From: Octopus sinensis
Taxonomy: Eukaryota
Assembly (NCBI RefSeq): GCF_006345805.1
Contig: NC_043005.1
Coordinates: forward strand, 5,766,001-5,830,000
DNA length: 64,000 nt
Reading direction: 5' to 3'
Part shown: positions 6,297 to 52,302 of the stretch, piece after piece
How the letters are laid out: the number at the start of each line of letters is the position of its first letter
Position numbering within the stretch: position 1 is the stretch's first letter
The notes under the pieces: model-generated
Seen by the model: only the letters and a program-made list of their open reading frames with translations
Told to the model about the DNA's origin: nothing
The model's database searches: none
Made by a program: the position numbers and the translations under genes

Positions 6297-6532
6297 CTGG
6301 AAACAAAGAACTCTGATTGTATGACTACAACACTTGTTTTTAGCTATCCTGTGACGTCAAGATATGGAAGCCCAAACACACATGCATTATGTATATATAG
6401 GCAATAGACTTCTTTCAGTTTCTGCTTACAAAATGCACTTACAAGGTTCTTGCCCAAAGTGCTACACAGTGACTAAGTTCCAAACCATATGGTTGGGAAG
6501 GAAACTTAACTGCACAATGATACCTGCACCTA

Positions 6533-6576
<44 letters not shown>

Positions 6577-6581
6577 GCTTT

Positions 6582-7390
6582 AGGTAGAAATAACTACAGG
6601 GGTATCAAACTACTGGATCAGGTGATGAAGGTCACAGAGAGGGTCATAGCCCAACTAATTAGGGAGAGAGTCTGCTTAGATGCAGTTCAGTTCTGTGCGA
6701 GGTAGAAGCACCACTGATGCTATATTGCTGGTATGGCAACTGCAGGAGAAATACCTAGCCAAAGATAAACCCCTATACTTGGCTTTTGTTGACTTGGAGA
6801 AAGCCTTTGACAGGGTTTCCCAATCCCTTATCTGGTGGGTGATGCAGAAACTGGGGATTGACGAGTGGTTAATAAGAGCTGTACAGGGATGCTGTTAGTA
6901 AGGTAAGGTTTGGTAATGTGTCCGGGTAGAAGTAGGGGTCGACCAAGGATCCGGAATCACTACCAGAATTAGAGAAGAAATTTCAGGTATGGAAGCAAAG
7001 TTTAGAATCAAAGGGACTTAGAGTCAATGCTGCAAAAACCAAAGTCCTCGTAAGTAGGAAGGCGTACACATCACAAACCCTTTCATGTAGATGGCCCTGC
7101 TCGATCTGTAGAAAAGGTGTAGGTAGAAACTTCATAAGATGTATCCAATGTAAACTATGGACACATAAGAGGTGCAGCAATATCAAAGGAAGGTTAACCG
7201 GGAAGATAGCTTTTGTGTGTGGCAGATGCACAGGGGCAATAAACACCGCAGATGCTCAGAAAACAGATTCCATCACATGCCAGGAGGAGAAATTAGAAGT
7301 AGTTGATAGCTTATGCTACCTAGATGACCAAGTCTGTAGTTGGGGTGGACTCAGAGAGCATTGCCACTAGAATAAGAATAGCCTGGGCTG
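6582..7390 (+). mobile_element. RTE-clade LINE reverse transcriptase fragment (frameshifted, internally deleted)
   Basis: NYRGIKLLDQVMKV, GRSTTDAI..QLQEKYLAKDKPLYLAFVDLEKAFDRV: conserved non-LTR RT motifs. Confidence 0.9.
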
Positions 7391-17313: not shown

Positions 17314-17664
17314 TGCAGTTTTCCTACAGCTGGATGCCCTTCCTAATGCCAACCACTCTGAGAGCGTAGTGGGTGCTGTTTTTTTTTGTGCCACTGGCCA
17401 ATTTCCTGCCTAGTACTCATTTCAGATCCCCAATTTATCTTTTCACTCCTAACTTCCTTCCCTCTATCCTTCTCATTGTACCTTTGGAACACAAGCACCA
17501 CTATTTTCTTTTTTTTTTGTTAGTTTTTGTTATGTAGTGTCCCACAGTTTGAAATACTTGCAATTTGTATTTTTACTGCTTATTTTAGCTTTGCTTGATA
17601 CATTTCCAAAATTAAACATTTTAATATGCAAAATATACTTCACATTATTATATATACTATGCAT

Positions 17665-18173
17665 TAATGCAAAAAAATATTGTGTTTATTGGCTATCTTC
17701 AAAATGATCACACCATCAATGGAAAATTTCAATACCAACTTCCTAAGGCAGTTATGAAAGGCTATCAAGACCAAACACCCAGAAAAACTGATGAATGGGG
17801 GTCTCGTTTCATTAGGACAATGCTTCAGCACACAAGTCCTTGGTTTCAATGGCTGCTGTGTGTGACTGGCTTTGAACTGGTTGATCACCCTCCCTATGTT
17901 AGTGATTTGGTTCCTGCTGGTTATCATCTGTTTCCCAACATAGAAAAACACTCAGCTGAGCACCAGTATCACTATGAGGAGAACATCTTATCTGTTGTTG
18001 ATGACCATTTTGATCAACAGAAAAGCTTCTTCGCCAGTGTGACCCAAGCACTGCAACTACTTATGGAAGTGTGAGGACAGTAAGAGGAACTATGTTAGAA
18101 AATGAACTTCATTTGGTCACATTCCATTGAAAGTGTCTAGCTCAGATTATGAACATTTCAGCCAAGCCTCATA
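17665..18173 (+). mobile_element. mariner (Tc1/mariner) transposase 3' fragment with right TIR
   Basis: ORF 17667-18074 contains GFELVDHPPYVSDLVPAGYHLFPN (decayed HPPYSPDL motif). TIR-like ATGAACATTTCAGCCAAGCCTCATA ends at 18173. Confidence 0.8.
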
Positions 18174-23134: not shown

Positions 23135-23184
<50 letters not shown>

Positions 23185-26100
23185 TATATACATACACACA
23201 TACATCTGCACACATTACATATATATAGGTACAGATGTGGCTGTGTAGTAAGAAGCTTGCTTCCCAACCACATGGTTCAAGTTCAGTCCCACTGCATGGC
23301 ACCCTGGGCAAGTATCTTCTTCTATAACTTCAGGCTAGCCAAAGTTGTGAGTGGATTTGGTAGACGGAAACTGAAAGATTTGTCCCCCCACCATTGCTTG
23401 GTAACTAATGTTAGTGTGTTTATGTCCCCAAAACTTAGTTCAGCAAAAGAGACCGATAGAACAAGTGCTAGGCTTACAAAGAATTAAGTCCTGGGGTCGA
23501 TTTGTTCAACTAAAGCAGTGCCTCTAGTATTGCCGCAGTCAAAATGACTTGAAACAAGTAAAAGAATACACTGTTTTGCATACATTTTCCCACATACACC
23601 AGCTTGTAAAGATGTGCCAAGTGCAAACATTTCTGTACCGAATATTCTTATAGTAAACCACTTGCCTAGTATCTAGGACTTATCAGTCTTGGTTACGACC
23701 CTTTGATCACTAGACATACATTTATATGGAAGGTCTGAATGTACAGCTGCGAGACTGCTCAGTGCAGATATTGTGCCTCACTGTTATCAATTTGTTGTTG
23801 ACCATAAGTGCTAAAAGATATTTACCTGCCATAAGTCAAAGCCCACAGCACCAATGCTAGTGTATTTGTAGAGATTTGTGTCAGGAGAATAGTCTGGGTT
23901 ATCAATTTCTGGGTGGATCCATTCGCCCTTGTAGCTGGGGTTATCAATCTGCTTGGGTTTCCATTCACCCTGTAAAGAACAATATCAGTCACCATGTCAA
24001 TAACTGAAAGGTTACCAGGCAGAAAGATTGAAATCTACATTTACAAAATCTGAACTCTGAATTACAACTTACTTTGTAGGCTGGGTTATCAATCATTGGG
24101 GGTTCCCATTCTCCATCCATATCATCATCCCAATCATCAGGTTTCTTGGCATCAGGGTCAGGAATGTGTTCGGGTTGATCCCAATCTTCAGGTTTTTTGT
24201 CATCAGGGTCATCCATTTTCTCACGATCATCCCAATCTTCTGGTTTCTTTGCACTAGGATCCTAAGTGGAAAAATAAATAAATACCCTGATCAGTCAGAG
24301 ACGCAGCTCGTATTGATATACAAAGTAACAGTGGAAACAGAAGTAGGATTTATATTTTAAAGGTTGTCACCAATGGTGTAAAATTACAGATTCAAGAAAG
24401 GTATTTTAGTCCTAAACATTTCAACATGCTGTCAATCCAGTATTTCAACATCAAGAGGGAACCAGTAGAGAAAATTGATAACATTTCCCAAGTCAACATA
24501 GCAAAAACATCTTAAAGTACCTTTCGAGAGAAATTGAAAGCCTTGTTATATTGTATTGTGTAACATTTGATTAACAAGTTACAAACATTCATCTAACATT
24601 CAGCAGAAGCACTGAGCAGTCTTTTTAACTGAATCATCCAGGTGTATCGAAACAAATGGATGAAATAACAGTCAAAATACTTAAGTAGTGTGATCCAACT
24701 TCTGGTTGTAGCTATGCACTAAAGCACTTACTCAAAATCTGTACAAAGTCAAACAATCAGAAGGAGCCATAAGGAATTTCTACACAATGCTCTAAAACTG
24801 ATAAACATCTCTTTTCACTAAATCTGGCTGGCTGGGTTTACACATAACATATATAAATAATGGGCAGCAAGCTAGCAGAATTATTGACACAGTGGACAAT
24901 ATGCTTAGCAGCATTTCGTCCATCTTTATACTCAGAGTTTACCTTTCGCCCATTTGGAATTGATAAAACAAGCACCAGTTGAGCACCAAGGTTGATGTAA
25001 TCGACTTAACCATTCCCCCATAATTGCTGGCCTTCTCAAAAATTTGAAACAGAGATGATGCCCTGGCCATCTCTAAAAGAGCCAACAGGCACACATTTGA
25101 CAGGCTTAGAAAGGACCCGATTAGTGCCCTAGGCTCCCTGTGAGTCAACTATTGAGATCAACCTCACCAGCATGGACTTCCTAGATGTCACTCTAGACTT
25201 GGGGCTCCAGTACACACAGTCCCTACTGCACACCAAACGAAAGGCTGTCCTACATCCACACAGCCTCCTGCCAACCCCACCCCCTATCATATTCAAGAAC
25301 TTAGTGAAGGGTGTCAGCAAGAGGATCTCGAACTTATCCTCAAGCCAAGAAATGTCTGACACCACAGCCACCTATTACGAGGCACTCTGGAACATTGTTT
25401 GGTTTACCCCACATTTCTCACTCAATGTAAAGACTCATGTGGGAAGAATATTCCCCAGGATAGTAGACAAACACTCCAGACACACAGGAAAGGACCTTTT
25501 ATTGCACACCCACCATGGAAAGTATATTAGCGAACATCCATAAAACGTGGGAGGGAGTACAACGACTGACCAGTGGGGGACCAATGCAAGGCTGAGGAGT
25601 AATAGCAGCAATGGCTCATCCAACAACACTGACAGCAATGGCAGATACGCCAACGATCCCCAATGCCTGCAGCCCCAGCAAAGCTAGCAGTTCCACACCT
25701 AGTGTTACCAATGACGGCAACCACATGACCATCATTGACAATGGCACAACAAGCTAGAAGCAACCTAATGGCAGAATTGCACATTCACCATTTTAGCCCA
25801 TATGGACTGCTAAGTGAACTAGTCTAAGGTAGATAGTCATCACCAACCCAAATTGTTTATTAACTCACTGACTGTAACAATTCTACCTCCACAGTTTGAA
25901 AAGCTATATGGCCTTTGCTATTAGAGTCTGACGAGTCGTCCATAATGCGTATGCAAAACCACTGGGCCTTCTATGATTGGACATACACTCAACTGCATAT
26001 ATATATATATATATATATCATCATCATCATCATCGTCGTTTAACGTCCGTTCTCCATGCTAGCATGGGTTGGACGGTTCGACCGGGGTTCTGGGAAGCCA

Positions 26101-29100
26101 GAAGGCTGCACCAGGCTCCAGTCTAATTTGGCAATGTTTCTACAGCTGGATGCCCTTCCTAACGCCAACCACTCCGTGAGTGTAGTGGGTGCTTTTTACG
26201 TGCCACCTGCACAGGTGCCAGGCGGGGCTGGCAACGGTCACGGTCAGATTGGTGTATTTTATGTGCCACCGGCACGGAAGCCAGTCGAGGCGGTGCTGGC
26301 ATCGGCCACGAGTCGGATAGTGCTTTTTACGTACCACCAGACCAGGGATCCTGGCTGGTTCAATTCGATTTCGCTTGCCCCAACATGTCTTCACAAGCAA
26401 AGGGGGTTGGCAAGGGTGCCTGTCGTACGGTCGCATTGGAGTATTTTACGTGCCACGGCCACGAGTCGGATAGTGCTTTTTACGTACCACCAGACCAGGG
26501 ATCCTGGCTGGTTCAATTCGATTTCGATTTCGATTTCGCTTGCCCCAACATGTCTTCACAAGCAAAGGGGGTTGGCATGGGTGCCTGTCGTACGGTCGCA
26601 TTGGAGTATTTTACGTGCCACGGCCCCGAGTCGGATAGTGCTTTTTACGTACCACCAGGCCAGGGATCCTGGCTGGTTCAATTCGGTTTCGATTTCGATT
26701 TCGCTTGCCCCAACATGTCTTCGCAAGCATGGGGGGTTGGGATGGGTGTCTGTCGTCGGATGAGGTTCTATATCGACTTCGCTTGCCTCAACCGGTCTTT
26801 GTGTCCAAGGGAATATATCACCATGACCGACCAGGCAATCAGATGTAGCTACACACCGCTGGTCATAATGTGCTTCGCATTGTTTTAGCCTTCAAATGAC
26901 ACTACCCTGCTGGCTAAGCGAGCAGGCCAACAGAAGAAATAATGAAAGTCATGGCGAAAGAGTACAGCAAAGATTCCCCCCACCCCTGCTGGAGCCTCGT
27001 GGAGCTTTAAGTGTTTTTGCTCAATAAACACTCACAACGCCCGGTCTGGAAATCGAAACCACAATTCTACGACCGCGAGTCCACTGCCCTAACCATATAT
27101 ATATATATTTATTGTTGCAGTAACTACAAGTGTTTGTGGTATTGCTATTGAAGAATTCTAAAACAGAATAACTGTGAAACATGCAACAGATCAACAAGAA
27201 GAATAAGTTACCTTGATTTTCTTGGGTGGCAAGAAGTCCCAGTCAGATTCCAAATCGCCACTTTCAACTTTCTCGTTATCAATTTTCACTTCATAAGTGT
27301 TGTCTGGTTTTACTATCAAGGTGTACAAGTGGGTGTAAACATCATCCTGTAATAATTTCAAATGAATTTGATCAGCAATTTCCACAAATGCCAAATAATC
27401 AAAATAAAAATCATTTTCTTGACAAATATAAAAATTTTTAAGCTTTGCACCCTCACCTTGCATCGGATATCTTTTTTAGTCAACAAGTTCTTTCCTTTGT
27501 AGTTGAAGATGACATGTACTTTCTTCGTGCCAGGACCACAGATATCAGGACCTGGAGATATACAATACATTCGTACAAATTTCTGTCACTAGACCAAGGC
27601 AAAGTTGAAGCACCACTATTGATGAATTTCAACAATAATATTAACCCTAGTAATTAGTAATGTGCTCATGTTTATCTTGTTATATTTTTGTTGAAATATG
27701 TATTTTTTCAACAAATTTTGAAAATAAGAGTCTATTCAAATTATTCGATGTTTGAAACAGAAATTAACATGAAATTTTGATGGAAGGTTTAAATATCGTA
27801 ATTTTTTTATACAATTCCTAATAACATTTAGTTATAAAAATAAGTTGGTTTAAAAAAAAAAAACAGTGAATGAGTATGAGGGTTCCATAGAGCAAAATAG
27901 GCACCAATGGCAAAATCCTTTGAGAAACACTGCTGTAACTAAACAGAAGCTCGATTTATGACCAACATGGACATTTAGGATTTCAAGTTGCAAACTCATC
28001 TATGATACAACAATTAATTTTCTTCCGTGATCATTCCTCTGAACACTTGTAAGAAAGCCTTCACTCTTCAGTTGCTTAGAATACTATATTACACTTTCAC
28101 TATAGTGAAGCAAGTTACTGAGAGTCAAATGTCTTAGACATAGATGCTATACTGTACAAGTAACAGAAAGAAACCACTCTACTATTCTTCGCCATCCCCC
28201 ACCCTCAAATACAACTGAATTTATTATTTCTATAATAAATGCTTTTTTCAATGTCTTCAGTTAAGTGAAGCATGATAATGCTTACGAGATACAAGTACCA
28301 AAACTAAAAAGAATTTTTTTAATTTACTATTCTGTGATACAAACATCAATTTGAACTTGGAGAGTTGGTGAAACTAGAACTTTAACGGCTATAGTTATCC
28401 ATGAAGTTCAGAGAATGTGTTAATAAACTATGAAAGCTACTTAAATTTACCATCAGTATAAATTACTTCCAGGTCTTGGCACTAAAATGCATAGCTAGTT
28501 AGCTGCTGTGTACAATGCTTATGAAGGTCATAAATTTTACCTTTCAGCATTCAGGTCTAAAGGTGAGCCAGAACTTGTTTATAATTCATAGACATGAAAA
28601 CAGCATAAATGTGGTCAGTTCGCATGGTTGCTGAAGGCTTTCCATTACTGCAGAGAGATCTTTGCAGGACTAACCATCAGTTTATTAGATCAGAGATTAC
28701 TGATTCTTTCACTAATTTTAGTAATTAGACTAGTCATGCTGGGGCACTACTTGAGTTTTTGTCAAACAAATCAACACCCCTTGTACTTTTTTTTTTCTTT
28801 ATTAAAGCCCAGCACTTCTTGTATCAGTCTCTAAGTGACAGGGACTGGTTGTCAAGCACTGGCGTGAGACAGACACAGACAACTTTTCTTTCAGTTTGCA
28901 TCAACCAAATCCACTCACAAAGGGTTTGTTCAGTCAAGCATTAGATATTAGCTTTTAGTGGGACTGAACTCAGAACCATGTGGTTGGGAAATAAACTTCT
29001 TACCACACAGCCAGGCCTGCACCTGTTTATAGTTTTAACTACCATTAGTATAAATAACCACATCACCTTAACAGGCCAGTTCGAATCATTTGTAACACAC

Positions 29101-32100
29101 ACACACACGTTGTAGAATAAATAGAATTTGTATTCACCGAACATAATGAGGTATGGAGAATCGCCATGGAGATTTTTCTGATCAATATCATCACTGTACA
29201 ATTTGATGTAGCCACCACCACAGTCAATATTCTGTTCATGTTTCACTGTAAACTGGAGAACAAGTGGTTCATTTTCATTGCTGAATTTATCAAAATTAGC
29301 TGAAATTCCATAGAATTTAGCATCTTGTGATGTTTTCAAGCCTGTAAAGAGAGGATTTAGAAAAACAAAGTACTATGACAGCATGGGCGAAATATGGATA
29401 TACTGTGTATGGAGTCAGGAATTTCTTATTGAGCAGCATACCTTTGTCTTTGACAGCATCACCATAAAATTTTCCTGCTGATATTTCAAACTTTCCTTGA
29501 TCACTGCCTTTGTATATTGAGTCGACCCATTTTGATCGCCAAGAATCATCTGAAATAGAAAAGTAAGTGTTATTGTAACTTTTAAATAAATCCTTTTCCA
29601 GAAAAAAAAAAAGGGAGGGGCTGTCTTCAAGTTTACCATAAGAAATGAAAACGAAATAGCGCCACTAGTACAATCTAGAACCTTTAAAACAAGCTTTCTA
29701 GAATTGTCGTTAGGAACTAATAGCTATCACTTTTGATTCATCAATTAATTTGTCGAATTAATTATTTTGAAACCCCTTCCACCAAATAAAGCCCAAAATT
29801 TAGAAAAAGCAAAAGAAAAAAAGTACAAAACTTTAGAAGCAGTGTTACAAGTTAACCAGGTAAATTGAATTGACATTTTCACGTGACCTTAAAAAGAAAC
29901 TATTTTGCCCACGCCCCCTACTATATATGTCAGTGACTACAAGCTTAAAATTAAGCATGCAACAATATCAATAATTATGTTACAGGGGGAAATACCCCAA
30001 GAGACCACTCTGTACACTAAACACAAGCCCGGCAGAGTCTCAGATGTAATAAGAGGAGTTGAAAAACTTCGAGTAAACAACCATGCAATAAAAATTGAAG
30101 TTTTTCAACTCCTTATCTTACATATGCGCAACCCAACCCGTATTTGTATGGGAAAATATGCAAGCTATGGATTTCTATTGGTAAGTAATCCGATATAGCG
30201 ATAACAGTTTAAAAACTGTAAGTAGCTATATTTGCTTTGTTAAAGCCAATTTTTCTTGAGAAAATATTTATTACCATTAAAATGTGAATAATTTCCATTC
30301 AAGTGTAGTGTGTAGGTTAACGCATTACCGAAATAACATTTAAATACTGTGCGAGATAAATATTTCATCTGCTGACAAGGATTAACTGATATGCCATAAA
30401 GCTAAGCCTTATTTCTCACATTGTTAACCCTCATTTTTTATTTAAAATGCAAAATTTTAAAGCGGTGTTATCGAGTACCGGTCAGGATTTTTAAATAATT
30501 TTAAAATTCCGGGCTACAAATTAGTATAAAATTTTGTAAGGGAATCAACAACTAAAGTCCCCAACATTGCATGAATTCTTCACTGGTCTTGGCAGCGATC
30601 AAATAAAGGCACAAACTAGCAACCACCGAAACAAACTGCAATGCAGCTGGCTGCACCAAGGGAGGTCTGCTGGGGGAGAAGACTGTGGCAGACGCATTCA
30701 CTCTTACACACGTGGATATTAATTCAAGAATAAAAGCAGGGTTGGCATGGAATCAAATTATAGCAAGAGTTTCGGAAACAAAAAACAAATGTGAATACAG
30801 ATATGTTCACATGTATCAGATAAAATACAGAAAGAAAGAAAAAAATCAAGTAAAAACAGATAAGACAGACCACATGCTGCTTCAGATTATATCCGCATTT
30901 TGTTCCAAACGTAAATGCTACGGAGATCAGCCACCAGAACTGGTGGCCCAGAGTGATTGAGAGAGTTCAGAGGAAAGATGGACGGCAACACATACCCGTA
31001 AAGCCGACCTCTATTCGGCAAAAACTTGTTACAGACAGAAGGAACAAAATCAGACAACTATAACCCACTTATATCTAATCAGTAATGATAGAGAGCATTT
31101 ACAAGAATAACCTCCGTCGAGGAAACTATTATGGCACCACCGAGACCTACACAACCCGGCCATAAGTGTTTTTAATGTTTTAATCTAATCAGGACAAATT
31201 CGACAGAAAAAGCCCAAAATATAATGCATGATCTGTATTCCCCACTTCTTTTCCCAGATGGTTTAACCGTACTGGGAAAAAGTTCCTATTATACCAGCAT
31301 CAGCGCAATACCTTCAGAATTATTTCTAATTCTTCTACCTTTCTATTTCCAGTGATTCGCAGAAATTAATTATTAAAGAATATGACAATTGCGCCGAACA
31401 TCAATAAGCTCTTGGATAGAGAGAGAATAATTTCCAAGAGTGGAGGAAGTGATACGGTGGTTGAATGAAATAAGCTAGCAGCATATTTCTGACACATCAG
31501 CAATGATTATGTCTAACATAAAATACAGGGACAGAAATTTTGCCGGCGGGGGATGCTATTATATGACTAGTTTAAATCGACTCCTTAATATTCAACACAT
31601 TTTATCGAACCCGGCGCGATTTTAACTCCAGAAAAGAATCTTAACCAAATAACGCTCCATCGATACAAGAATAATTCCTAACCCTGACAGAATAACCATA
31701 AATATTCCAAGTGTTGCTATTTGATCAGTTCCAATTTTTGGAACATCCACAGAAAATAGAGTACATTTAATTTTATGGAGTGGAGGAACCATCGCTTTCA
31801 CAGTCTTCATTAATTTTTTTCTTAATATGAGCCTAATGCATGTGTATATATTTTTGTATTTATATATGCAGATTTCGATGTTGGTCGATTCCTTGGGAGC
31901 TGGAGTTTCACTGTGAGGAGAGAGCATTAGTATTTCTTTACTTTGGAATTTTAGCTTCGTTAATTGATTCTTTTAAAGACGAACAAACCCAAAGCCAAGA
32001 TAAAATTCTAACTGAACACAACATACTTAGATTACCAATTTGAATTTGGGACCGCAAGGGCGAGAATATAGAATACATACCATTCAGGATATTTTGAATA

Positions 32101-35549: not shown

Positions 35550-36015
35550 CATCATCATCATCATTTAATGTCCGTTTTCCATGCTAGCATGGGTTGGACG
35601 GTACGACCGGGGTCTGGGAAGCCAGGAGGTTGCACCAGGCCCAGTCTGATCTGGCAGTGTTTCTACAGCTGGATGCCCTTTCTAATGCCAACCACTCTGT
35701 GAGTGTAGTGGGTGCTTTTTATGTGCCACCGGCACGGAGGCCAGTCGAGGCGGCGCTGGCAACGGCCACATTCGGATGGTTCTTTTATGTGTCACCAGTA
35801 CTGGTATCACAACTACAATTTCCATTGATTTTTTTTTATCGATTTCGATTTCACTTGCCTCAACAGGTCTTCGCAAGCAGAGTTTTGTGTCCCAAGAAGG
35901 AAAGGAATGCATAAGTGGACTGGCTACATCCGAGGTAAAGGCCATGGGTTATGGTCTCACTTGTCCTGCCGGATCTTCTCACGCACAGCATATTTCCAAA
36001 GGTCTCGGTCACTAG
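35550..36015 (-). mobile_element. RTE-LINE 3' fragment
   Basis: (CAT)n tail plus the same 3' UTR as 26018 and 39905. Confidence 0.8.
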
Positions 36016-39594: not shown

Positions 39595-39628
<34 letters not shown>

Positions 39629-39904
39629 TGTACACATGCACACACACACGCACACATGCATTCATGTATATATACATATATTTACATAAAAAGCCTGCAG
39701 TCCACTCTGCAAAGTGGTTGGTCTTAGGAAGGACATGGCTGCTTCCTTCTCTGGAGACTGTCAGAATGATTTGGACGCCTCTGATGAAAAACCAATAAGG
39801 TTTGAAAATTGATTAAGGTTGTTCATAATTCTTTTTTTTCAGTTTGTGGAGAAATGGCTAAAATTTGCCCTGTTTATAATTATACTATATGTTATATATA
39901 TATA

Positions 39905-40555
39905 TATCATCATCATCATCATCATCATTTAACATCTGTTTTCCATGCTAGCATGGGTTGGACGATTTGACTGAGGACTGGCGAACCAGATGGCTGCAAC
40001 AGGTTCCAATCTGATCTGGTAGAGTTTCTACAGCTGGATGCCCTTCCTAATGCCAACCACTCTGAGAGTGTAGTGGGTGCTTTTATGTGCCACCGGCACG
40101 GGGGCCAGTCAGGCAGTACTGGCAATGACTTCGCTCAAATGTTTTTTCACATGCCACCAGCACAAGTGCCAGGAAGGCAACGCTGGTAACAATCACGCTT
40201 GAATGGTGCCTTTTACGTGCCACTGGCACGAAAGCCAATTAGCCTCTCCATCAACGATCATGCTCGGATGGTGCTCTTAGCACCCCACTAGCACAGATGC
40301 CAGTCATTAAATTTGATTTCGATTTCACTTGCCTCAACAGGTCTTCGCAGGAAGAGTTTAGTGTCCAAAAAAGGAAAGGTATGCATAAGTGGGCTGGTTA
40401 CGCATCTAGCATAGGCCATGAGGTTATGGTCTCATTTGGCTTGCCGGGTCTTCTCAAGCACAGCATATTTCCAAAAGTCTTGGTCACTAGTCATTGCCTC
40501 GGTGCGGCCTAAAGTTCGAAGTTCGTGCTTCACCACTTCATCCCATGTCTTCCTG
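39905..40555 (-). mobile_element. RTE-LINE 3' fragment
   Basis: (CAT)n tail, shared 3' UTR and end of ORF2. Confidence 0.8.
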
Positions 40556-43013: not shown

Positions 43014-43249
43014 TCTTCTACTCTTTTACCTGTTTCAGGTATTTGATAATGGCCATGCAGGAGTACCACCTTTAGTCGAACAAATCAACCCCAGGACTTA
43101 TTCTTTGTAAGCCTAGTATTTATTCTATTGGTTCCTTTTGCTGAACCGCTAATTTACAGGACATAAACACACCAACCTTGGCTGCCAAGTGATTGTGGGG
43201 GGGGGGGGACAAACACAGACACACAAATATACACACAACACACACACAA

Positions 43250-44208: not shown

Positions 44209-44431
44209 TATATATATGTATGTATGTTTGTGTGTCTGTATTTTTCCCTCTAGCATTGCTTGACAACCGATGCTGCTGTGTTTATGTCCCCGTCACTTTG
44301 CGGTTCGGCAAAAGGGACTGATAGAATAAGTACTGGGCTTACAAAGAATAAGTCACGGGGTCGATCTGCTCGACTAAAGGAGGTGCTCCAGCATGGTCAC
44401 AGTCAAATGACTGAAACAAGTAAAAGAGAGA
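43951..44431 (+). mobile_element. Family A SINE
   Basis: Full-length copy with an internal (TA)n of about 100 nt. Confidence 0.88.
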
Positions 44432-44779
44432 AAGAGATATATCGTTGCTATTAAGTTAAATAGATTGCTTCATATATGGGCTGAGCTGTTTTATGTTCAA
44501 ATTTGGCCAAATGCAATTTTTTCAATATTTAATTTTTGCTTGCAATAGCCAGTTCTTTAGGTCAAACTATCGTATCTCCAGCTGCTTCAGATGCCAAGAT
44601 ATCAAAAATTGTCAAAGTGTGCTACAATGGTTTTGCTATGGAATGGTGAGACTATTTTTCTGTTTACTGAAAAAGCAATGTTTGGGACTTACAACACTTT
44701 TGCAAAATAGCAACGATATATATATATATATATAATATATTATTGAATGGAAGAAATGGAGTTGAACGAAGATTGTACA

Positions 44780-44889
44780 GAATTCCTTTTATTACATTCT
44801 ACACATGTTTCAAAGGCCACAAATTTCCAAATTCTGATTAAATAAGAGTACCATATTGTGGCTTTCTCATCAGGAAAAAACAGGAATTC
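44780..44889 (-). ncRNA. Type I hammerhead ribozyme (predicted), mirror copy on the minus strand, cleavage between 44800 and 44799
   Basis: Exact reverse complement of 45021-45130 except one base in loop II. Confidence 0.7.
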
Positions 44890-45020
44890 CGTTGACAGAA
44901 CAAAACAGAACAGAGGCGCAGCAATTCGAACGAGGAGGCTCTTTAAGGTTCAGCCATGGGCTCTTAAAGAGCCTCCTCGTTCGAATTGCTGCGCCTCTGT
45001 TCTGTTTTGTTCTGTCAACG

Positions 45021-45130
45021 GAATTCCTGTTTTTTCCTGATGAGAAAGCCACAATATGGTACCCTTATTTAATCAGAATTTGGAAATTTGTGGCCTTTGA
45101 AACATGTGTAGAATGTAATAAAAGGAATTC
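45021..45130 (+). ncRNA. Type I hammerhead ribozyme (predicted), cleavage after GUA 45110
   Basis: Core CUGAUGA 45037-45043. Stem II 45044-45054/45088-45098 (10 of 11 pairs). GAAA 45099-45102. Stem III AC-AUGU-GU, then A17. Stem I proximal UUC/GAA and distal GAAUUCC/GGAAUUC with an internal loop. Confidence 0.7.
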
Positions 45131-45325
45131 TGTACAATCTTCGTTCAACTCCATTTCTTCCATTCAATAATAATATTAAACTTCAATTATCCGCACCAAT
45201 GCACGGTTGCAGCACCAAATGGTCTTATCTCCAACCGTGTATTTTCTGCTGTGATTTTTGCTACCCAGGTATCGGTTAAACTTTTGAATAATCTGTAACA
45301 AGAAAATTCATCTTTCTATTTCAAC

Positions 45326-46404: not shown

Positions 46405-47279
46405 TACATTTAAAGGTGGTGCTCCAGCATGGCCACAGTCAAATGACTGAAACAGGTAAAAGAGAGTACATATGTGGAAAATCATATTTATTGAATTTGA
46501 TGAAACTTGACATGTGAGTAGAAGTCGTGTCTAGAAACCTCATGACATACTTAGAGCGTTGAAAAAATCGATAATATGGCCCCTAGAAAGGACCTTTATA
46601 CCTCATTTGACTATTTTTAAACACCCAAGGGAAATAACCCATACCACCTGCAGTTTTTAGCGAAGCGATCAATATTTGATTGATATAATCAGCCGACCTA
46701 ATTCTGCATTTCACAATTTTGAACTACTAAACATTATTATTGCACTGCCTTAATTTGAATCATAAACATTAAAGACTTCATTCATACATTTCCATACATA
46801 CATACTTTTTTTAATGGCCATCACTCCGATAATTCTACATTTTTACAGTCACACTTTTTCCATGACAGTAGAAAAATGTTTTATTCTACAACATATTTAT
46901 AGTGGCTTCATGCAGGCATAGCATGGATTCGATCCTCGATTGCCAAATTTCGCACAGTAAAACAATAGTTTTTCTGTGAATGACAGCAGTTATACATTTC
47001 CCAGATGCATTCGCTAAGCAGAATAATTTCTTTGCCTCTTACCAATCTCCAACAACCTCTCTCACCAACTTCTGACAATCTTTCTCACCAACCTCTGAAA
47101 TTCTCTCTCGCCAACCTCCAACAATCTCTCCCTCCTCCAGCTGACATTATTTTGTACTTTTTCATGATGGGAAATACACCTTTTGTGGCAGTTATAACAA
47201 AATTGCCTTCTTATATCAGAGTAATAAAGTGTTTCAATAGAACATATTTACCCCTAGAAATTACTGGGTACACAAGCCA

Positions 47280-51478: not shown

Positions 51479-52302
51479 GTATGTTCATATTCTACTTTCG
51501 ATTAATTTAACTTTTATGATTGACTCCCTTAAATTTTTTTTTTCTAGACTAGATTTCCTTTTTTTTTTCCTCATTAGGGATGTAAATTTAAATAATTAAA
51601 TTTTTTTTGTTTCACTACATTAAATATATTGGCATATTAAATATGTTAGCACTACTTGTTTTCCTAGCAGAAGATTTCCCTACACAAACTATAAAGCTGG
51701 TTGTTAATTATGCAAAAGTGAAATTTTTAAATAATTATACGGTTAAAATGTATAATTCTTCTTCTTTTTTTTCTTTCTCAGAATTTATTGAGAAAGTCAT
51801 ACAAACAGACACAATAGAATGAATCTAAGCCGCCGGCATGCTTTTATTTATTATTCATTTATCTTTGCATATATTTTAAACTACTTTATTTCCTTGTACA
51901 AGTAGTTCGCGAGGCGGGAGGAGGGGGTAAGCAGATTATGCAATTATTGTACTTATGGTCAACCATAGTTTACATTGGCTGAGTAGGTTAGCCAACTGTT
52001 TAATCACCTTCCCGAGGACAAGAGATGTTCGCGTTACGTGGTGAGTTTTATGAAATCGGGGTTTCGAAGCCGCTCCACCAATCGTTGGCGACGACGTGGA
52101 AACACTCACATTCATGTCGTGTGTATGTGTTATTACTCGCCCGCGCGCACACGCACACACACATATGCATACATTATGTGTGTGTGTGTGTGTGTATGTA
52201 TGTATATATATATATATATTTATACACAAACACTCACACGTAGATAGGCATGAATACATGCACACACACATACTCTCACATGTATGTATATGTGTGTGTA
52301 TG

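What the first reader, a model, noticed from the sequence alone, without database searches (positions are those of the whole stretch)
45021..45130. Hidden type I hammerhead ribozyme with an extended stem I
Seen in sequence: all conserved core elements occur in type I order. These are the stem I 5' strand, CUGAUGA (45037-43), an 11-bp stem II (one A.C mismatch, G10.1.U11.1 closing pair, 33-nt loop), GAAA (45099-102), a 2-bp stem III whose AC-AUGU region includes the palindrome ACAUGU, a GUA triplet (45108-10), and a stem I 3' strand pairing proximally (UUC/GAA) and distally (GAAUUCC/GGAAUUC) around an internal loop. Established knowledge: Penelope-like elements and retrozymes carry type I hammerheads with minimal, palindromic stem III that often cleave as dimers. 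Inference: this is a potentially active self-cleaving RNA from a cephalopod PLE/retrozyme-like family.
Basis: partly seen in the sequence, partly recalled or inferred. Interest (0 to 1): 0.85.

Follow-up and report, generated by a model that had tools for sequence, protein, structure and literature searches.

The report
Hammerhead-like motif inside a perfect palindrome
The sequence has every core element of a type I hammerhead self-cutting RNA, but it sits twice, mirror-wise, in a 435-bp near-perfect palindrome that looks like a head-to-head retroelement remnant, and no family copies or cleavage activity could be shown.

Summary
CUGAUGA, an 11-position helix II (one A.C mismatch, G.U closing pair, 33-nt loop), GAAA, a 2-bp helix III, GUA and a two-part helix I are all present at 45021-45130. 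A descriptor match of this grade is expected about 2e-5 times per window, roughly once per 3-Gb genome.

The motif lies in the right arm of a palindrome (arms 44738-44947 and 44963-45172, 209 of 210 positions complementary, 15-nt loop). An identical motif therefore sits on the minus strand at 44780-44889.

The palindrome abuts a (TA)n microsatellite. Each motif lies about 60 nt from an outer end. This matches published Penelope-like element (PLE) insertions: inverted 5'-truncated copies, a hammerhead near the 3' end, microsatellite targets, and paired hammerheads on opposite strands.

Several results count against it:
- No Rfam hammerhead model matches, even at E<=10.
- 10.1-11.1 is G.U, not G-C.
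- The hammerhead fold is 6.8 kcal/mol above the minimum free energy.
- A read-through transcript would form a -381 kcal/mol hairpin.
- No other copy was found anywhere searchable, so covariation is untested.

Verdict: a plausible PLE-type hammerhead relic, of a known kind, with activity unproven. Interest is modest.

The parts
44738..44947 (-). Left arm of the palindrome. It is the mirror copy of the right arm, read on the minus strand.
   Evidence: the repeat finder I1. blastn gives 99.5% over 210 nt. The single mismatch is at 44847.
44948..44962 (.). Non-palindromic 15-nt central loop (GTTCAGCCATGGGCT). It is the junction of the two inverted copies.
44963..45172 (+). Right arm of the palindrome, read as the presumed 5'-truncated 3'-terminal fragment of a retroelement.
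   Evidence: It has no other copy in the window.
45021..45130 (+). Type I hammerhead-like motif, plus-strand copy
   Evidence: hand check; descriptor hit
44780..44889 (-). Mirror hammerhead-like motif on the minus strand. C3 is at 44873, A17 at 44800. It differs only by one base in loop 2.
45037..45043 (+). Core box CUGAUGA (positions C3 to A9)
45044..45098 (+). Helix II: 45044-45054 pairs with 45098-45088. It has an A.C mismatch at 45047/45095, a G.U closing pair, and a 33-nt loop 2 (45055-45087).
   Evidence: The distal 7 bp have a pairing probability of 0.77-0.997, above 0.94 for six of them. The basal 3 bp have about 0.06.
45099..45102 (+). Core box GAAA (G12, A13, A14, A15.1)
45102..45110 (+). 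Minimal helix III (A-U and C-G, loop AUGU) followed by the cleavage-site nucleotide A17. The predicted cut is between 45110 and 45111. The segment ACAUGUGU is near-palindromic.
   Evidence: The dimer minimum-energy fold forms an 8-bp intermolecular helix, and the isolated duplex is -8.0 kcal/mol.
45021..45036 (+). Helix I 5' strand: distal part 45021-45027, proximal part 45034-45036
   Evidence: Pairing probability is above 0.96 for the distal part and about 0.016 for the proximal part.
45111..45130 (+). Helix I 3' strand: proximal part 45111-45113, distal part 45124-45130
44716..44737 (.). (TA)n microsatellite directly abutting the left end of the palindrome. It is the presumed insertion target.
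45170..45176 (.). ATAATAT, directly repeated at 44732-44738. It is a possible 7-bp target-site duplication, but this is weak evidence because the sequence is low-complexity AT.
   Evidence: read

Best explanation
The locus is a young, solo, head-to-head pair of about 210-225-nt 3'-terminal fragments of a retroelement, most likely a PLE or a non-autonomous element mobilised by one. It inserted at a (TA)n microsatellite. Each fragment carries a PLE-style minimal type I hammerhead motif about 60 nt from its 3' (outer) end.

In the parent element the motif would cut the precursor RNA after GUA, here between 45110 and 45111. It would probably act as a dimer through the near-palindromic helix III segment ACAUGUGU.

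In this particular copy the motif is probably a passenger. A transcript crossing the whole palindrome would fold into a 210-bp hairpin rather than a hammerhead. Only a transcript that starts inside one arm could adopt the ribozyme fold.

Shown: the motif, its rarity by chance, the palindrome, the microsatellite flank and the predicted dimer helix. Inferred: PLE origin, insertion by an inverted or snap-back cDNA event, and any cleavage.
For: Motif and statistics:
- The core is complete and the three-helix geometry is correct.
- The chance expectation is 2e-5 per window.

Context:
- The arms are 209/210 complementary with an asymmetric 15-nt loop, and both flanks are unique. This fits two copies made in one event, and fits a fold-back read artefact less well.
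- The 3' ends and hammerheads face outward. The two C3 positions are 164 bp apart on opposite strands.
- A (TA)n repeat lies at the left junction.

Literature:
- PMC4209133 reports paired minimal hammerheads 100-700 bp apart on opposite strands. It also reports a long helix II, a short helix I, and a palindromic 15.2-16.2 pair and loop 3 in PLE hammerheads.
- PMC8557442 reports inverted 5'-truncated PLE copies that form inverted repeats, hammerheads near the 3' ends, and a microsatellite insertion bias, (TA)n for Naiads.
- PMC7229834 describes a 2-bp stem with a tetraloop as typical of helix III in invertebrates.
- PMC13282606 lists 31 recently active PLE families in Octopus vulgaris.

Folding: the dimer fold forms the 8-bp intermolecular helix III.
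Against: - No Rfam hammerhead family matches at gathering score, nor at E<=10 on 141 nt, 801 nt or (at E<=5) the whole window.
- Two of the four hallmarks that PMC4209133 lists for PLE minimal hammerheads are absent. [quoted passage not shown]
- A 33-nt loop 2 is atypical.
- The hammerhead fold is -15.4 kcal/mol against a minimum of -22.2. The pairs next to the core have 1-7% probability, because UUUUUC pairs with GAGAAA instead. The z-score of the fold is only -1.7.
- There is no RT or GIY-YIG coding sequence near the locus, and the arm ORFs have no homologues.
- No second copy of the arm was found in the window, in metagenome contigs or in prokaryotic genome contigs. Family membership and covariation are therefore wholly untested.
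- The (TA)n preference is documented for Naiad PLEs, which lack canonical hammerheads (PMC8557442).
Confidence: 0.45

Rival explanations
1. The hammerhead resemblance is a coincidence inside an unrelated palindromic repeat. Candidates are a foldback or MITE-type DNA transposon, or a snap-back (self-primed) cDNA insertion of a LINE or SINE 3' end. The local hairpins exist for other reasons, and CUGAUGA and GAAA flank one of them by chance.
For: - At this grade about 1 chance motif is expected per 3-Gb genome. Up to about 8 are expected once the 7-fold excess of real hairpins is allowed for.
- A second, clearly weaker hammerhead-like hit exists at 39781 in the same window. This suggests the random models understate the chance rate.
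- No Rfam hammerhead hit was found.
- The 10.1-11.1 pair is G.U and the hammerhead fold is not the minimum-energy fold.
- The junctions carry TA and (AAT)n-like sequence and a possible 7-bp duplication. By my own knowledge, not tested here, these would also suit TA-targeting DNA transposons or (TAA)n-targeting Dong-type LINEs. PMC13282606 lists Dong-R4 LINEs as active in octopus.
Against: - The joint occurrence of a perfect 11-nt core, both nested helices and a near-palindromic helix III has an expectation of 4e-6 to 2e-5 per window.
- The outward-facing, 3'-proximal placement on both arms matches the published PLE architecture.
- No recognisable terminal inverted-repeat signature or transposase was seen.
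Confidence: 0.35
2. The palindrome is an assembly artefact, for example a fold-back or chimeric long read, or a mis-resolved inverted repeat. Only one arm would then exist in the genome. The motif in that arm could still be real or chance.
For: - The 209/210 symmetry is what a mirrored read would give.
- PMC8557442 notes that complex PLE insertions often cause problems in whole-genome assemblies.
Against: - The arms are only 210 nt long and are flanked on both sides by different, unique sequence. Fold-back reads usually mirror kilobases and end contigs.
- There is an asymmetric 15-nt loop and one arm-to-arm mismatch.
- The window contains no Ns.
Confidence: 0.1
3. The locus functions as a long-hairpin RNA gene, a source of endogenous siRNA or miRNA-like RNAs. 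The hammerhead-like motif would be irrelevant.
For: - A read-through transcript folds into a 210-bp perfect hairpin of -380.7 kcal/mol.
- Several miRNA models score on the centre of the palindrome, for example mir-3158 at 52.7 bits.
Against: - All these scores are far below the gathering thresholds (52.7 against 97). They simply reflect a perfect hairpin.
- No conservation or expression data are available.
- Single-copy young palindromes of this kind are usually insertion products.
Confidence: 0.05
4. It is a metazoan non-LTR retrozyme unit, that is, a tandem repeat expressed as a circular RNA.
For: It has a type I hammerhead-like motif with a 2-bp helix III and tetraloop, low GC, and a size within the 170-400 nt range (PMC7229834).
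Against: The defining tandem direct repeats are absent. The two copies are inverted, and no further copy occurs in 64 kb.
Confidence: 0.03

Closest known systems
Minimal type I hammerheads of Penelope-like elements (Cervera and De la Pena 2014, PMC4209133)
   Same: - The core boxes are complete and the topology is type I.
- Helix II is long and helix I is short, with poorly defined distal pairing.
- Helix III is minimal and the 15.1-16.1 segment is near-palindromic, which fits action as a dimer.
- The motif occurs as a pair on opposite strands 164 bp apart, within the reported range of 100-700 bp.
- It lies near the 3' end of truncated copies.
   Different: - The 10.1-11.1 pair is G.U instead of the highly conserved G-C.
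[quoted passage not shown]
- Loop 2 is 33 nt, where small loops are usual.
- There is no RT/GIY-YIG ORF or direct pseudo-LTR at this locus.
- Family copies and covariation could not be examined.
PLE insertion architecture: an inverted 5'-truncated copy head-to-head, with microsatellite targets (Craig et al. 2021, PMC8557442)
   Same: - Two copies lie head-to-head with their 3' ends outward.
- The copies are extremely 5'-truncated.
- A (TA)n repeat lies at the junction.
   Different: - Only about 0.2 kb survives per copy, and there is no element body.
- The (TA)n bias is documented for Naiads, which lack canonical hammerheads. Naiads in cephalopods are described as old remnants, whereas this palindrome is young (0.5% arm divergence).
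Canonical metazoan type I hammerheads and non-LTR retrozymes (Rfam Hammerhead_1; PMC7229834)
   Same: - The catalytic core is the same.
- Helix III is a 2-bp stem with a tetraloop, as in invertebrate hammerheads.
- The unit has low GC.
   Different: - No Rfam model matches.
- Helix I is 3 bp rather than 6, and helix II is 11 bp rather than 4.
- No loop 1 to loop 2 tertiary-contact motif is recognisable.
- The unit is not in tandem direct repeats.
Viroid-like circular RNAs with hammerheads in both polarities (Avsunviroidae, retroviroid-like CarSV RNA). This comparison rests on my own knowledge.
   Same: A hammerhead is encoded on both strands. The plus-strand hammerhead sequence is paired with the complement of the minus-strand one in a long rod.
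   Different: - Here the two motifs are identical because the DNA is a near-perfect palindrome.
- No circular RNA evidence exists.
- Viroid rods are imperfect, and their two ribozymes differ.

Membership tests
Hammerhead ribozyme, type I | Conserved core nucleotides C3 U4 G5 A6 N7 G8 A9, G12 A13 A14, A15.1-U16.1, and H17 (not G) | tested here: met
   CUGAUGA at 45037-45043, GAAA at 45099-45102, U45109 and A45110
Hammerhead ribozyme, type I | Three helices around the core, with helix I open and helices II and III closed | tested here: met
   The descriptor hit has helix II of 10 bp plus 1 mismatch, helix III of 2 bp and helix I of 3+7 bp. The helix ends next to the core are weak in the thermodynamic ensemble, at 1-7%.
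Hammerhead ribozyme, type I | G10.1-C11.1 closing pair of helix II | tested here: not met
   G45044.U45098 is a wobble pair. G10.1 itself is kept.
Hammerhead ribozyme, type I | Match to a curated covariance model (Rfam hammerhead families) | tested here: not met
   No hammerhead family is listed at gathering score, at E<=10 on 801 nt or 141 nt, or at E<=5 on the whole window.
Hammerhead ribozyme, type I | Loop 1 to loop 2 tertiary contacts | not testable with these tools
   No recognisable canonical loop motifs. PLE and mussel hammerheads also lack them (PMC4209133, PMC7229834).
Hammerhead ribozyme, type I | Mg2+-dependent self-cleavage 3' of H17 | not testable with these tools
   Needs in vitro transcription and cleavage assays.
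PLE minimal hammerhead (PMC4209133) | [quoted passage not shown] | tested here: not met
   Helix II starts directly after A9. No alternative register restores the unpaired nucleotide (hand check).
PLE minimal hammerhead (PMC4209133) | Palindromic 15.2-16.2 pair and loop 3, which allows a dimeric helix III | tested here: met
   ACAUGUGU pairs with itself over 8 bp (6 Watson-Crick pairs and 2 G.U). It forms in the dimer minimum-energy fold, and the isolated duplex is -8.0 kcal/mol.
PLE minimal hammerhead (PMC4209133) | Consensus families within a genome, showing covariation | not testable with these tools
   The source genome is not searchable here. No copy was found in the window or in the collections.
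Penelope-like element | ORF with a telomerase-like RT and a GIY-YIG endonuclease | tested here: not met
   No such ORF is listed anywhere in the window among stop-to-stop ORFs of 90 aa or more. ORFs from the arm and five other regions give no RT or GIY-YIG Pfam hit. This is expected for a copy that is extremely 5'-truncated, so it does not exclude PLE origin.
Penelope-like element | Inverted 5'-truncated copy adjacent head-to-head, and/or pseudo-LTRs | tested here: met
   Head-to-head arms of 210 nt. No direct pseudo-LTR is present.
Penelope-like element | Insertion into a microsatellite | tested here: inconclusive
   (TA)n at 44716-44737 abuts the left end, and (AAT)-like sequence lies at the right end. 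(TA)n is very common throughout this window.
Metazoan non-LTR retrozyme | Short tandem direct repeats, each carrying a type I hammerhead | tested here: not met
   There is no tandem or direct copy. The two copies are inverted.

The most novel reading that the evidence does not exclude
The palindrome could be a DNA copy of an ambisense, viroid-like or retrozyme-like RNA that carries a hammerhead in both polarities. Alternatively it could represent an undescribed mollusc PLE lineage. Its hammerhead would have an 11-bp helix II with a 33-nt insertion and a G10.1.U11.1 pair, and it would be switched off in the genomic hairpin and switched on only in arm-initiated transcripts or dimers.
Probability: 0.04. 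Interest if true: 0.65.

Novelty: new member of a known kind. Interest (0 to 1): 0.3.

Why it matters
If it is genuine, it adds one more lineage to the very large set of PLE-associated minimal hammerheads in invertebrate genomes. Its variant features are a long helix II with a large loop and a G.U pair at 10.1-11.1. These features escape the Rfam models, which is a small reminder that covariance-model scans under-count such ribozymes. It would not change the understanding of hammerheads or of PLEs.

The more useful practical lesson concerns context. The motif sits in a perfect palindrome, so this copy is unlikely to act as a ribozyme when transcribed through. Any assay must use single-arm or dimer constructs.

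Tried and rejected
- **Rfam at four settings.** No hammerhead hit. The hits on the centre of the palindrome (mir-3158, mir-290, MIR319 and others) are generic perfect-hairpin scores far below gathering, and I rejected them.
- **tRNA or SINE head in the arm** (a GTTCGAAT box is visible by eye). ARAGORN finds nothing.
- **Coding arm.** One frame is open for 73 codons to the end of the arm. The 104-aa ORF has no homologue among 5.8 billion proteins. The 60-aa ORF hits only translated tandem repeats. Pfam gives nothing. I rejected coding.
- **Independent assemblies.** Six exact-product look-ups were made, five of them on ORFs in or beside the palindrome. None of those five is on record. The closest available relative, a Logan contig from run SRR11869384, is only 76-78% identical in DNA.
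- **Collection scans.** The two-part pattern gave 0 hits in metagenome contigs and in prokaryotic genome contigs. A 24-mer gave 0 in genome contigs. A 21-mer gave 2 metagenome hits whose similarity stops at 22 nt, so they are chance.
- **Empty-site comparison.** I tried to use the neighbouring dispersed repeats. The flanks of the palindrome are unique in the window, so no empty site is available.
- **Six-frame Pfam scan of the neighbourhood.** I replaced it with an ORF listing and selected scans.
- **Species identification.** Only mollusc-level support was obtained. No paper mentions the SRA run.
- **Retrozyme reading.** Rejected, because there are no tandem repeats.

Full report
**1. The observation**

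- CUGAUGA lies at 45037-45043.
- Helix II pairs 45044-45054 with 45098-45088. It has ten pairs, one A.C mismatch at 45047/45095 and a G.U closing pair. Loop 2 is 33 nt.
- GAAA lies at 45099-45102.
- Helix III is two base pairs (A45102-U45109 and C45103-G45108) with loop AUGU.
- GUA lies at 45108-45110.
- Helix I has three proximal pairs (45034-45036 with 45113-45111) and seven distal pairs (45021-45027 with 45130-45124).

My own permissive type I descriptor re-finds the motif.

**2. Is it more than chance?**

- In 40 Mb of first-order Markov sequence modelled on the window, the permissive descriptor gave 8 hits, or 0.026 per 128 kb. None had a helix II of 7 bp or more.
- An independent-bases calculation gives 2.4e-5 per window for a helix II of this grade. 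It gives 3.7e-6 if the distal helix I is also required. That is about 1 and 0.2 per 3-Gb genome.
- Real hairpins in the window are about 7 times more frequent than the independent-bases expectation.
- The reversed window, used as a control, gave no hit.

The motif is therefore improbable for one window. It is not impossible for a genome-wide screen.

**3.

The motif lies in the right arm of a near-perfect palindrome.
- The arms are 44738-44947 and 44963-45172, 210 nt each, with a 15-nt asymmetric loop.
- There is one mismatch, C45063 against A44847, inside loop 2.
- The same motif therefore exists on the minus strand at 44780-44889. C3 is at 44873 and the cut would fall after 44800.
- Both motifs face outward, each about 60 nt from an outer end. 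The two C3 positions are 164 bp apart.
- The arm has no other copy in the 64-kb window, and both flanks are unique.
- The left end abuts (TA)n at 44716-44737.
- ATAATAT is directly repeated at 44732-44738 and 45170-45176. This could be a target-site duplication, but it is weak evidence in AT-rich sequence.

**4. Tests of ribozyme character**

- No Rfam hammerhead family matches at gathering score, at E<=10 on 801 nt or 141 nt, or at E<=5 on the whole window.
- The 110-nt RNA has a minimum free energy of -22.2 kcal/mol, with a z-score of -1.74.
- The best fold that contains the hammerhead helices is -15.4 kcal/mol. UUUUUC (45031-45036) prefers to pair with GAGAAA (45042-45047). The pairs next to the core therefore have 1-7% probability.
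- The distal helix I is above 96%, and the distal 7 bp of helix II are at 77-99.7%, above 94% for six of them.
- Two copies are predicted to pair through an 8-bp intermolecular helix III, ACAUGUGU with ACAUGUGU. The isolated duplex is -8.0 kcal/mol. This matches the dimer model for minimal hammerheads.
- A transcript across the whole palindrome would form a -380.7 kcal/mol hairpin. That would exclude the ribozyme fold.

**5. Comparison with the literature**

PMC4209133 describes metazoan PLE hammerheads.
- They are minimal type I motifs with a longer helix II (6-8 bp), a short helix I (2-5 bp) and a tiny, palindromic helix III.
- They have low activity in vitro and work only as dimers.
- They are often solitary, on truncated copies, and are sometimes found as pairs 100-700 bp apart on opposite strands.
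- The paper lists four hallmarks against chance. Here the palindromic helix III is met. The highly conserved G10.1-C11.1 pair and the extra nucleotide after position 9 are not met. Consensus families with covariation could not be tested.

PMC8557442 describes the insertion architecture.
- PLE insertions are strongly 5'-truncated.
- They often have an inverted truncated copy head-to-head.
- They carry hammerheads near their 3' ends.
- They show a microsatellite insertion bias, (TA)n for Naiads, although Naiads lack canonical hammerheads.

PMC7229834 defines metazoan retrozymes by tandem direct repeats. These are absent here. PMC13282606 lists recently active PLE families in Octopus vulgaris.

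**6. Search for relatives**

Nothing informative was found.
- The ORFs that cross the arms have no homologues.
- Exact-product look-ups failed.
- Pattern scans of metagenome and prokaryotic genome collections gave nothing, or 22-nt chance matches.
- The window is from an animal. Its calreticulin exons are closest to named mollusc proteins: Batillaria at 72% and Mytilus at 66%.
- An unnamed Logan contig is 97% identical in protein but only 76-78% in DNA.
- Copy number, core conservation and covariation remain untested. These are the decisive family-level tests.

**7. Interpretation**

The best-supported reading, at about 0.45, is a young head-to-head pair of 5'-truncated 3' ends of a PLE-type retroelement. 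Each end carries a PLE-style hammerhead motif, and the pair inserted at a microsatellite.
- The near-identity of the arms fits two copies made in one event.
- In the parent element the motif would cut the precursor after GUA, probably as a dimer.
- In this copy it is probably inert when transcribed through.

The main rival, at about 0.35, is a chance motif in an unrelated palindromic repeat, such as a MITE or foldback element, or a snap-back LINE or SINE fragment.
- It is favoured by the Rfam negatives, the G.U pair, the unfavourable fold, the unknown number of windows screened, and a second weak motif at 39781.
- It is disfavoured by the very low joint probability and by the fit to PLE architecture.

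An assembly artefact, at about 0.1, is made less likely by the short arms, the unique flanks, the asymmetric loop and the single mismatch. A hairpin-RNA gene and a retrozyme are minor alternatives.

**8. Verdict**

- If genuine, this is a new member, with variant features, of a known and very abundant class.
- Cleavage activity is unproven, and I put its probability at roughly 0.2.

Noticed in passing
window 39781-39819 (+): A second, weaker hammerhead-like motif. It has CUGAUGA, an unpaired A, helix II AAACC/GGUUU (10.1-11.1 is A-U) with loop AAUAA, GAAA, the near-palindromic segment AAUUGAUU, A17 at 39815, and a 4-bp helix I. It is unique in the window and lies just 3' of a dispersed-repeat fragment (39684-39736). 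The expected number of hits at this grade is 0.026 per window, so it is probably chance.
   Followed up: partly
window 23992-29664 (-): Calreticulin gene exons (Pfam PF00262 on homologues). The best named relatives are molluscs: Batillaria attramentaria at 72% and Mytilus edulis at 66%. An unnamed Logan contig (run SRR11869384) is 97% identical in protein but 76-78% in DNA, which points to a related species.
   Followed up: partly
window 17625-18071 (+): ORF that looks, by eye, like a mariner-type transposase C-terminal remnant (HPPY..DL.P..YHLF). It has no Pfam hit at E<=0.1.
   Followed up: partly
window 6355-7367 (+): ORF fragments that resemble the tail of a LINE reverse transcriptase, followed by a PHD-type zinc finger (Pfam PHD, E=1.5e-5). 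They are interrupted by a microsatellite.
   Followed up: partly
window 26303-26756; related 35588-36012 and about 39960-40500: A 165-bp tandem repeat (2.4-2.7 copies, 93-96% matches) that belongs to a dispersed repeat family seen several times in the window. It gives long spurious ORFs.
   Followed up: no
window 44375-44430, 46411-46466, inverted at 43021-43074: A 56-nt block, TAAAGGAGGTGCTCCAGCATGG.CACAGTCAAATGACTGAAACA.GTAAAAGAGAG, repeated at 87-95% identity. It is likely a SINE-like dispersed element that flanks (TA)n tracts.
   Followed up: no
window 25133-25540 (+): A 136-aa open frame (..[10 protein letters not shown].. ..[28 protein letters not shown]..) inside a calreticulin intron. 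From memory it recalls ORFs of invertebrate retroelements. It has no Pfam hit at E<=0.1, so this is unverified.
   Followed up: partly
whole window, e.g. 52174-52244, 39597-39665, 23139-23209: Many (TA)n and (TATG)n microsatellites produce sub-threshold matches to miRNA covariance models such as mir-297, mir-1277 and mir-3149. All are noise.
   Followed up: yes
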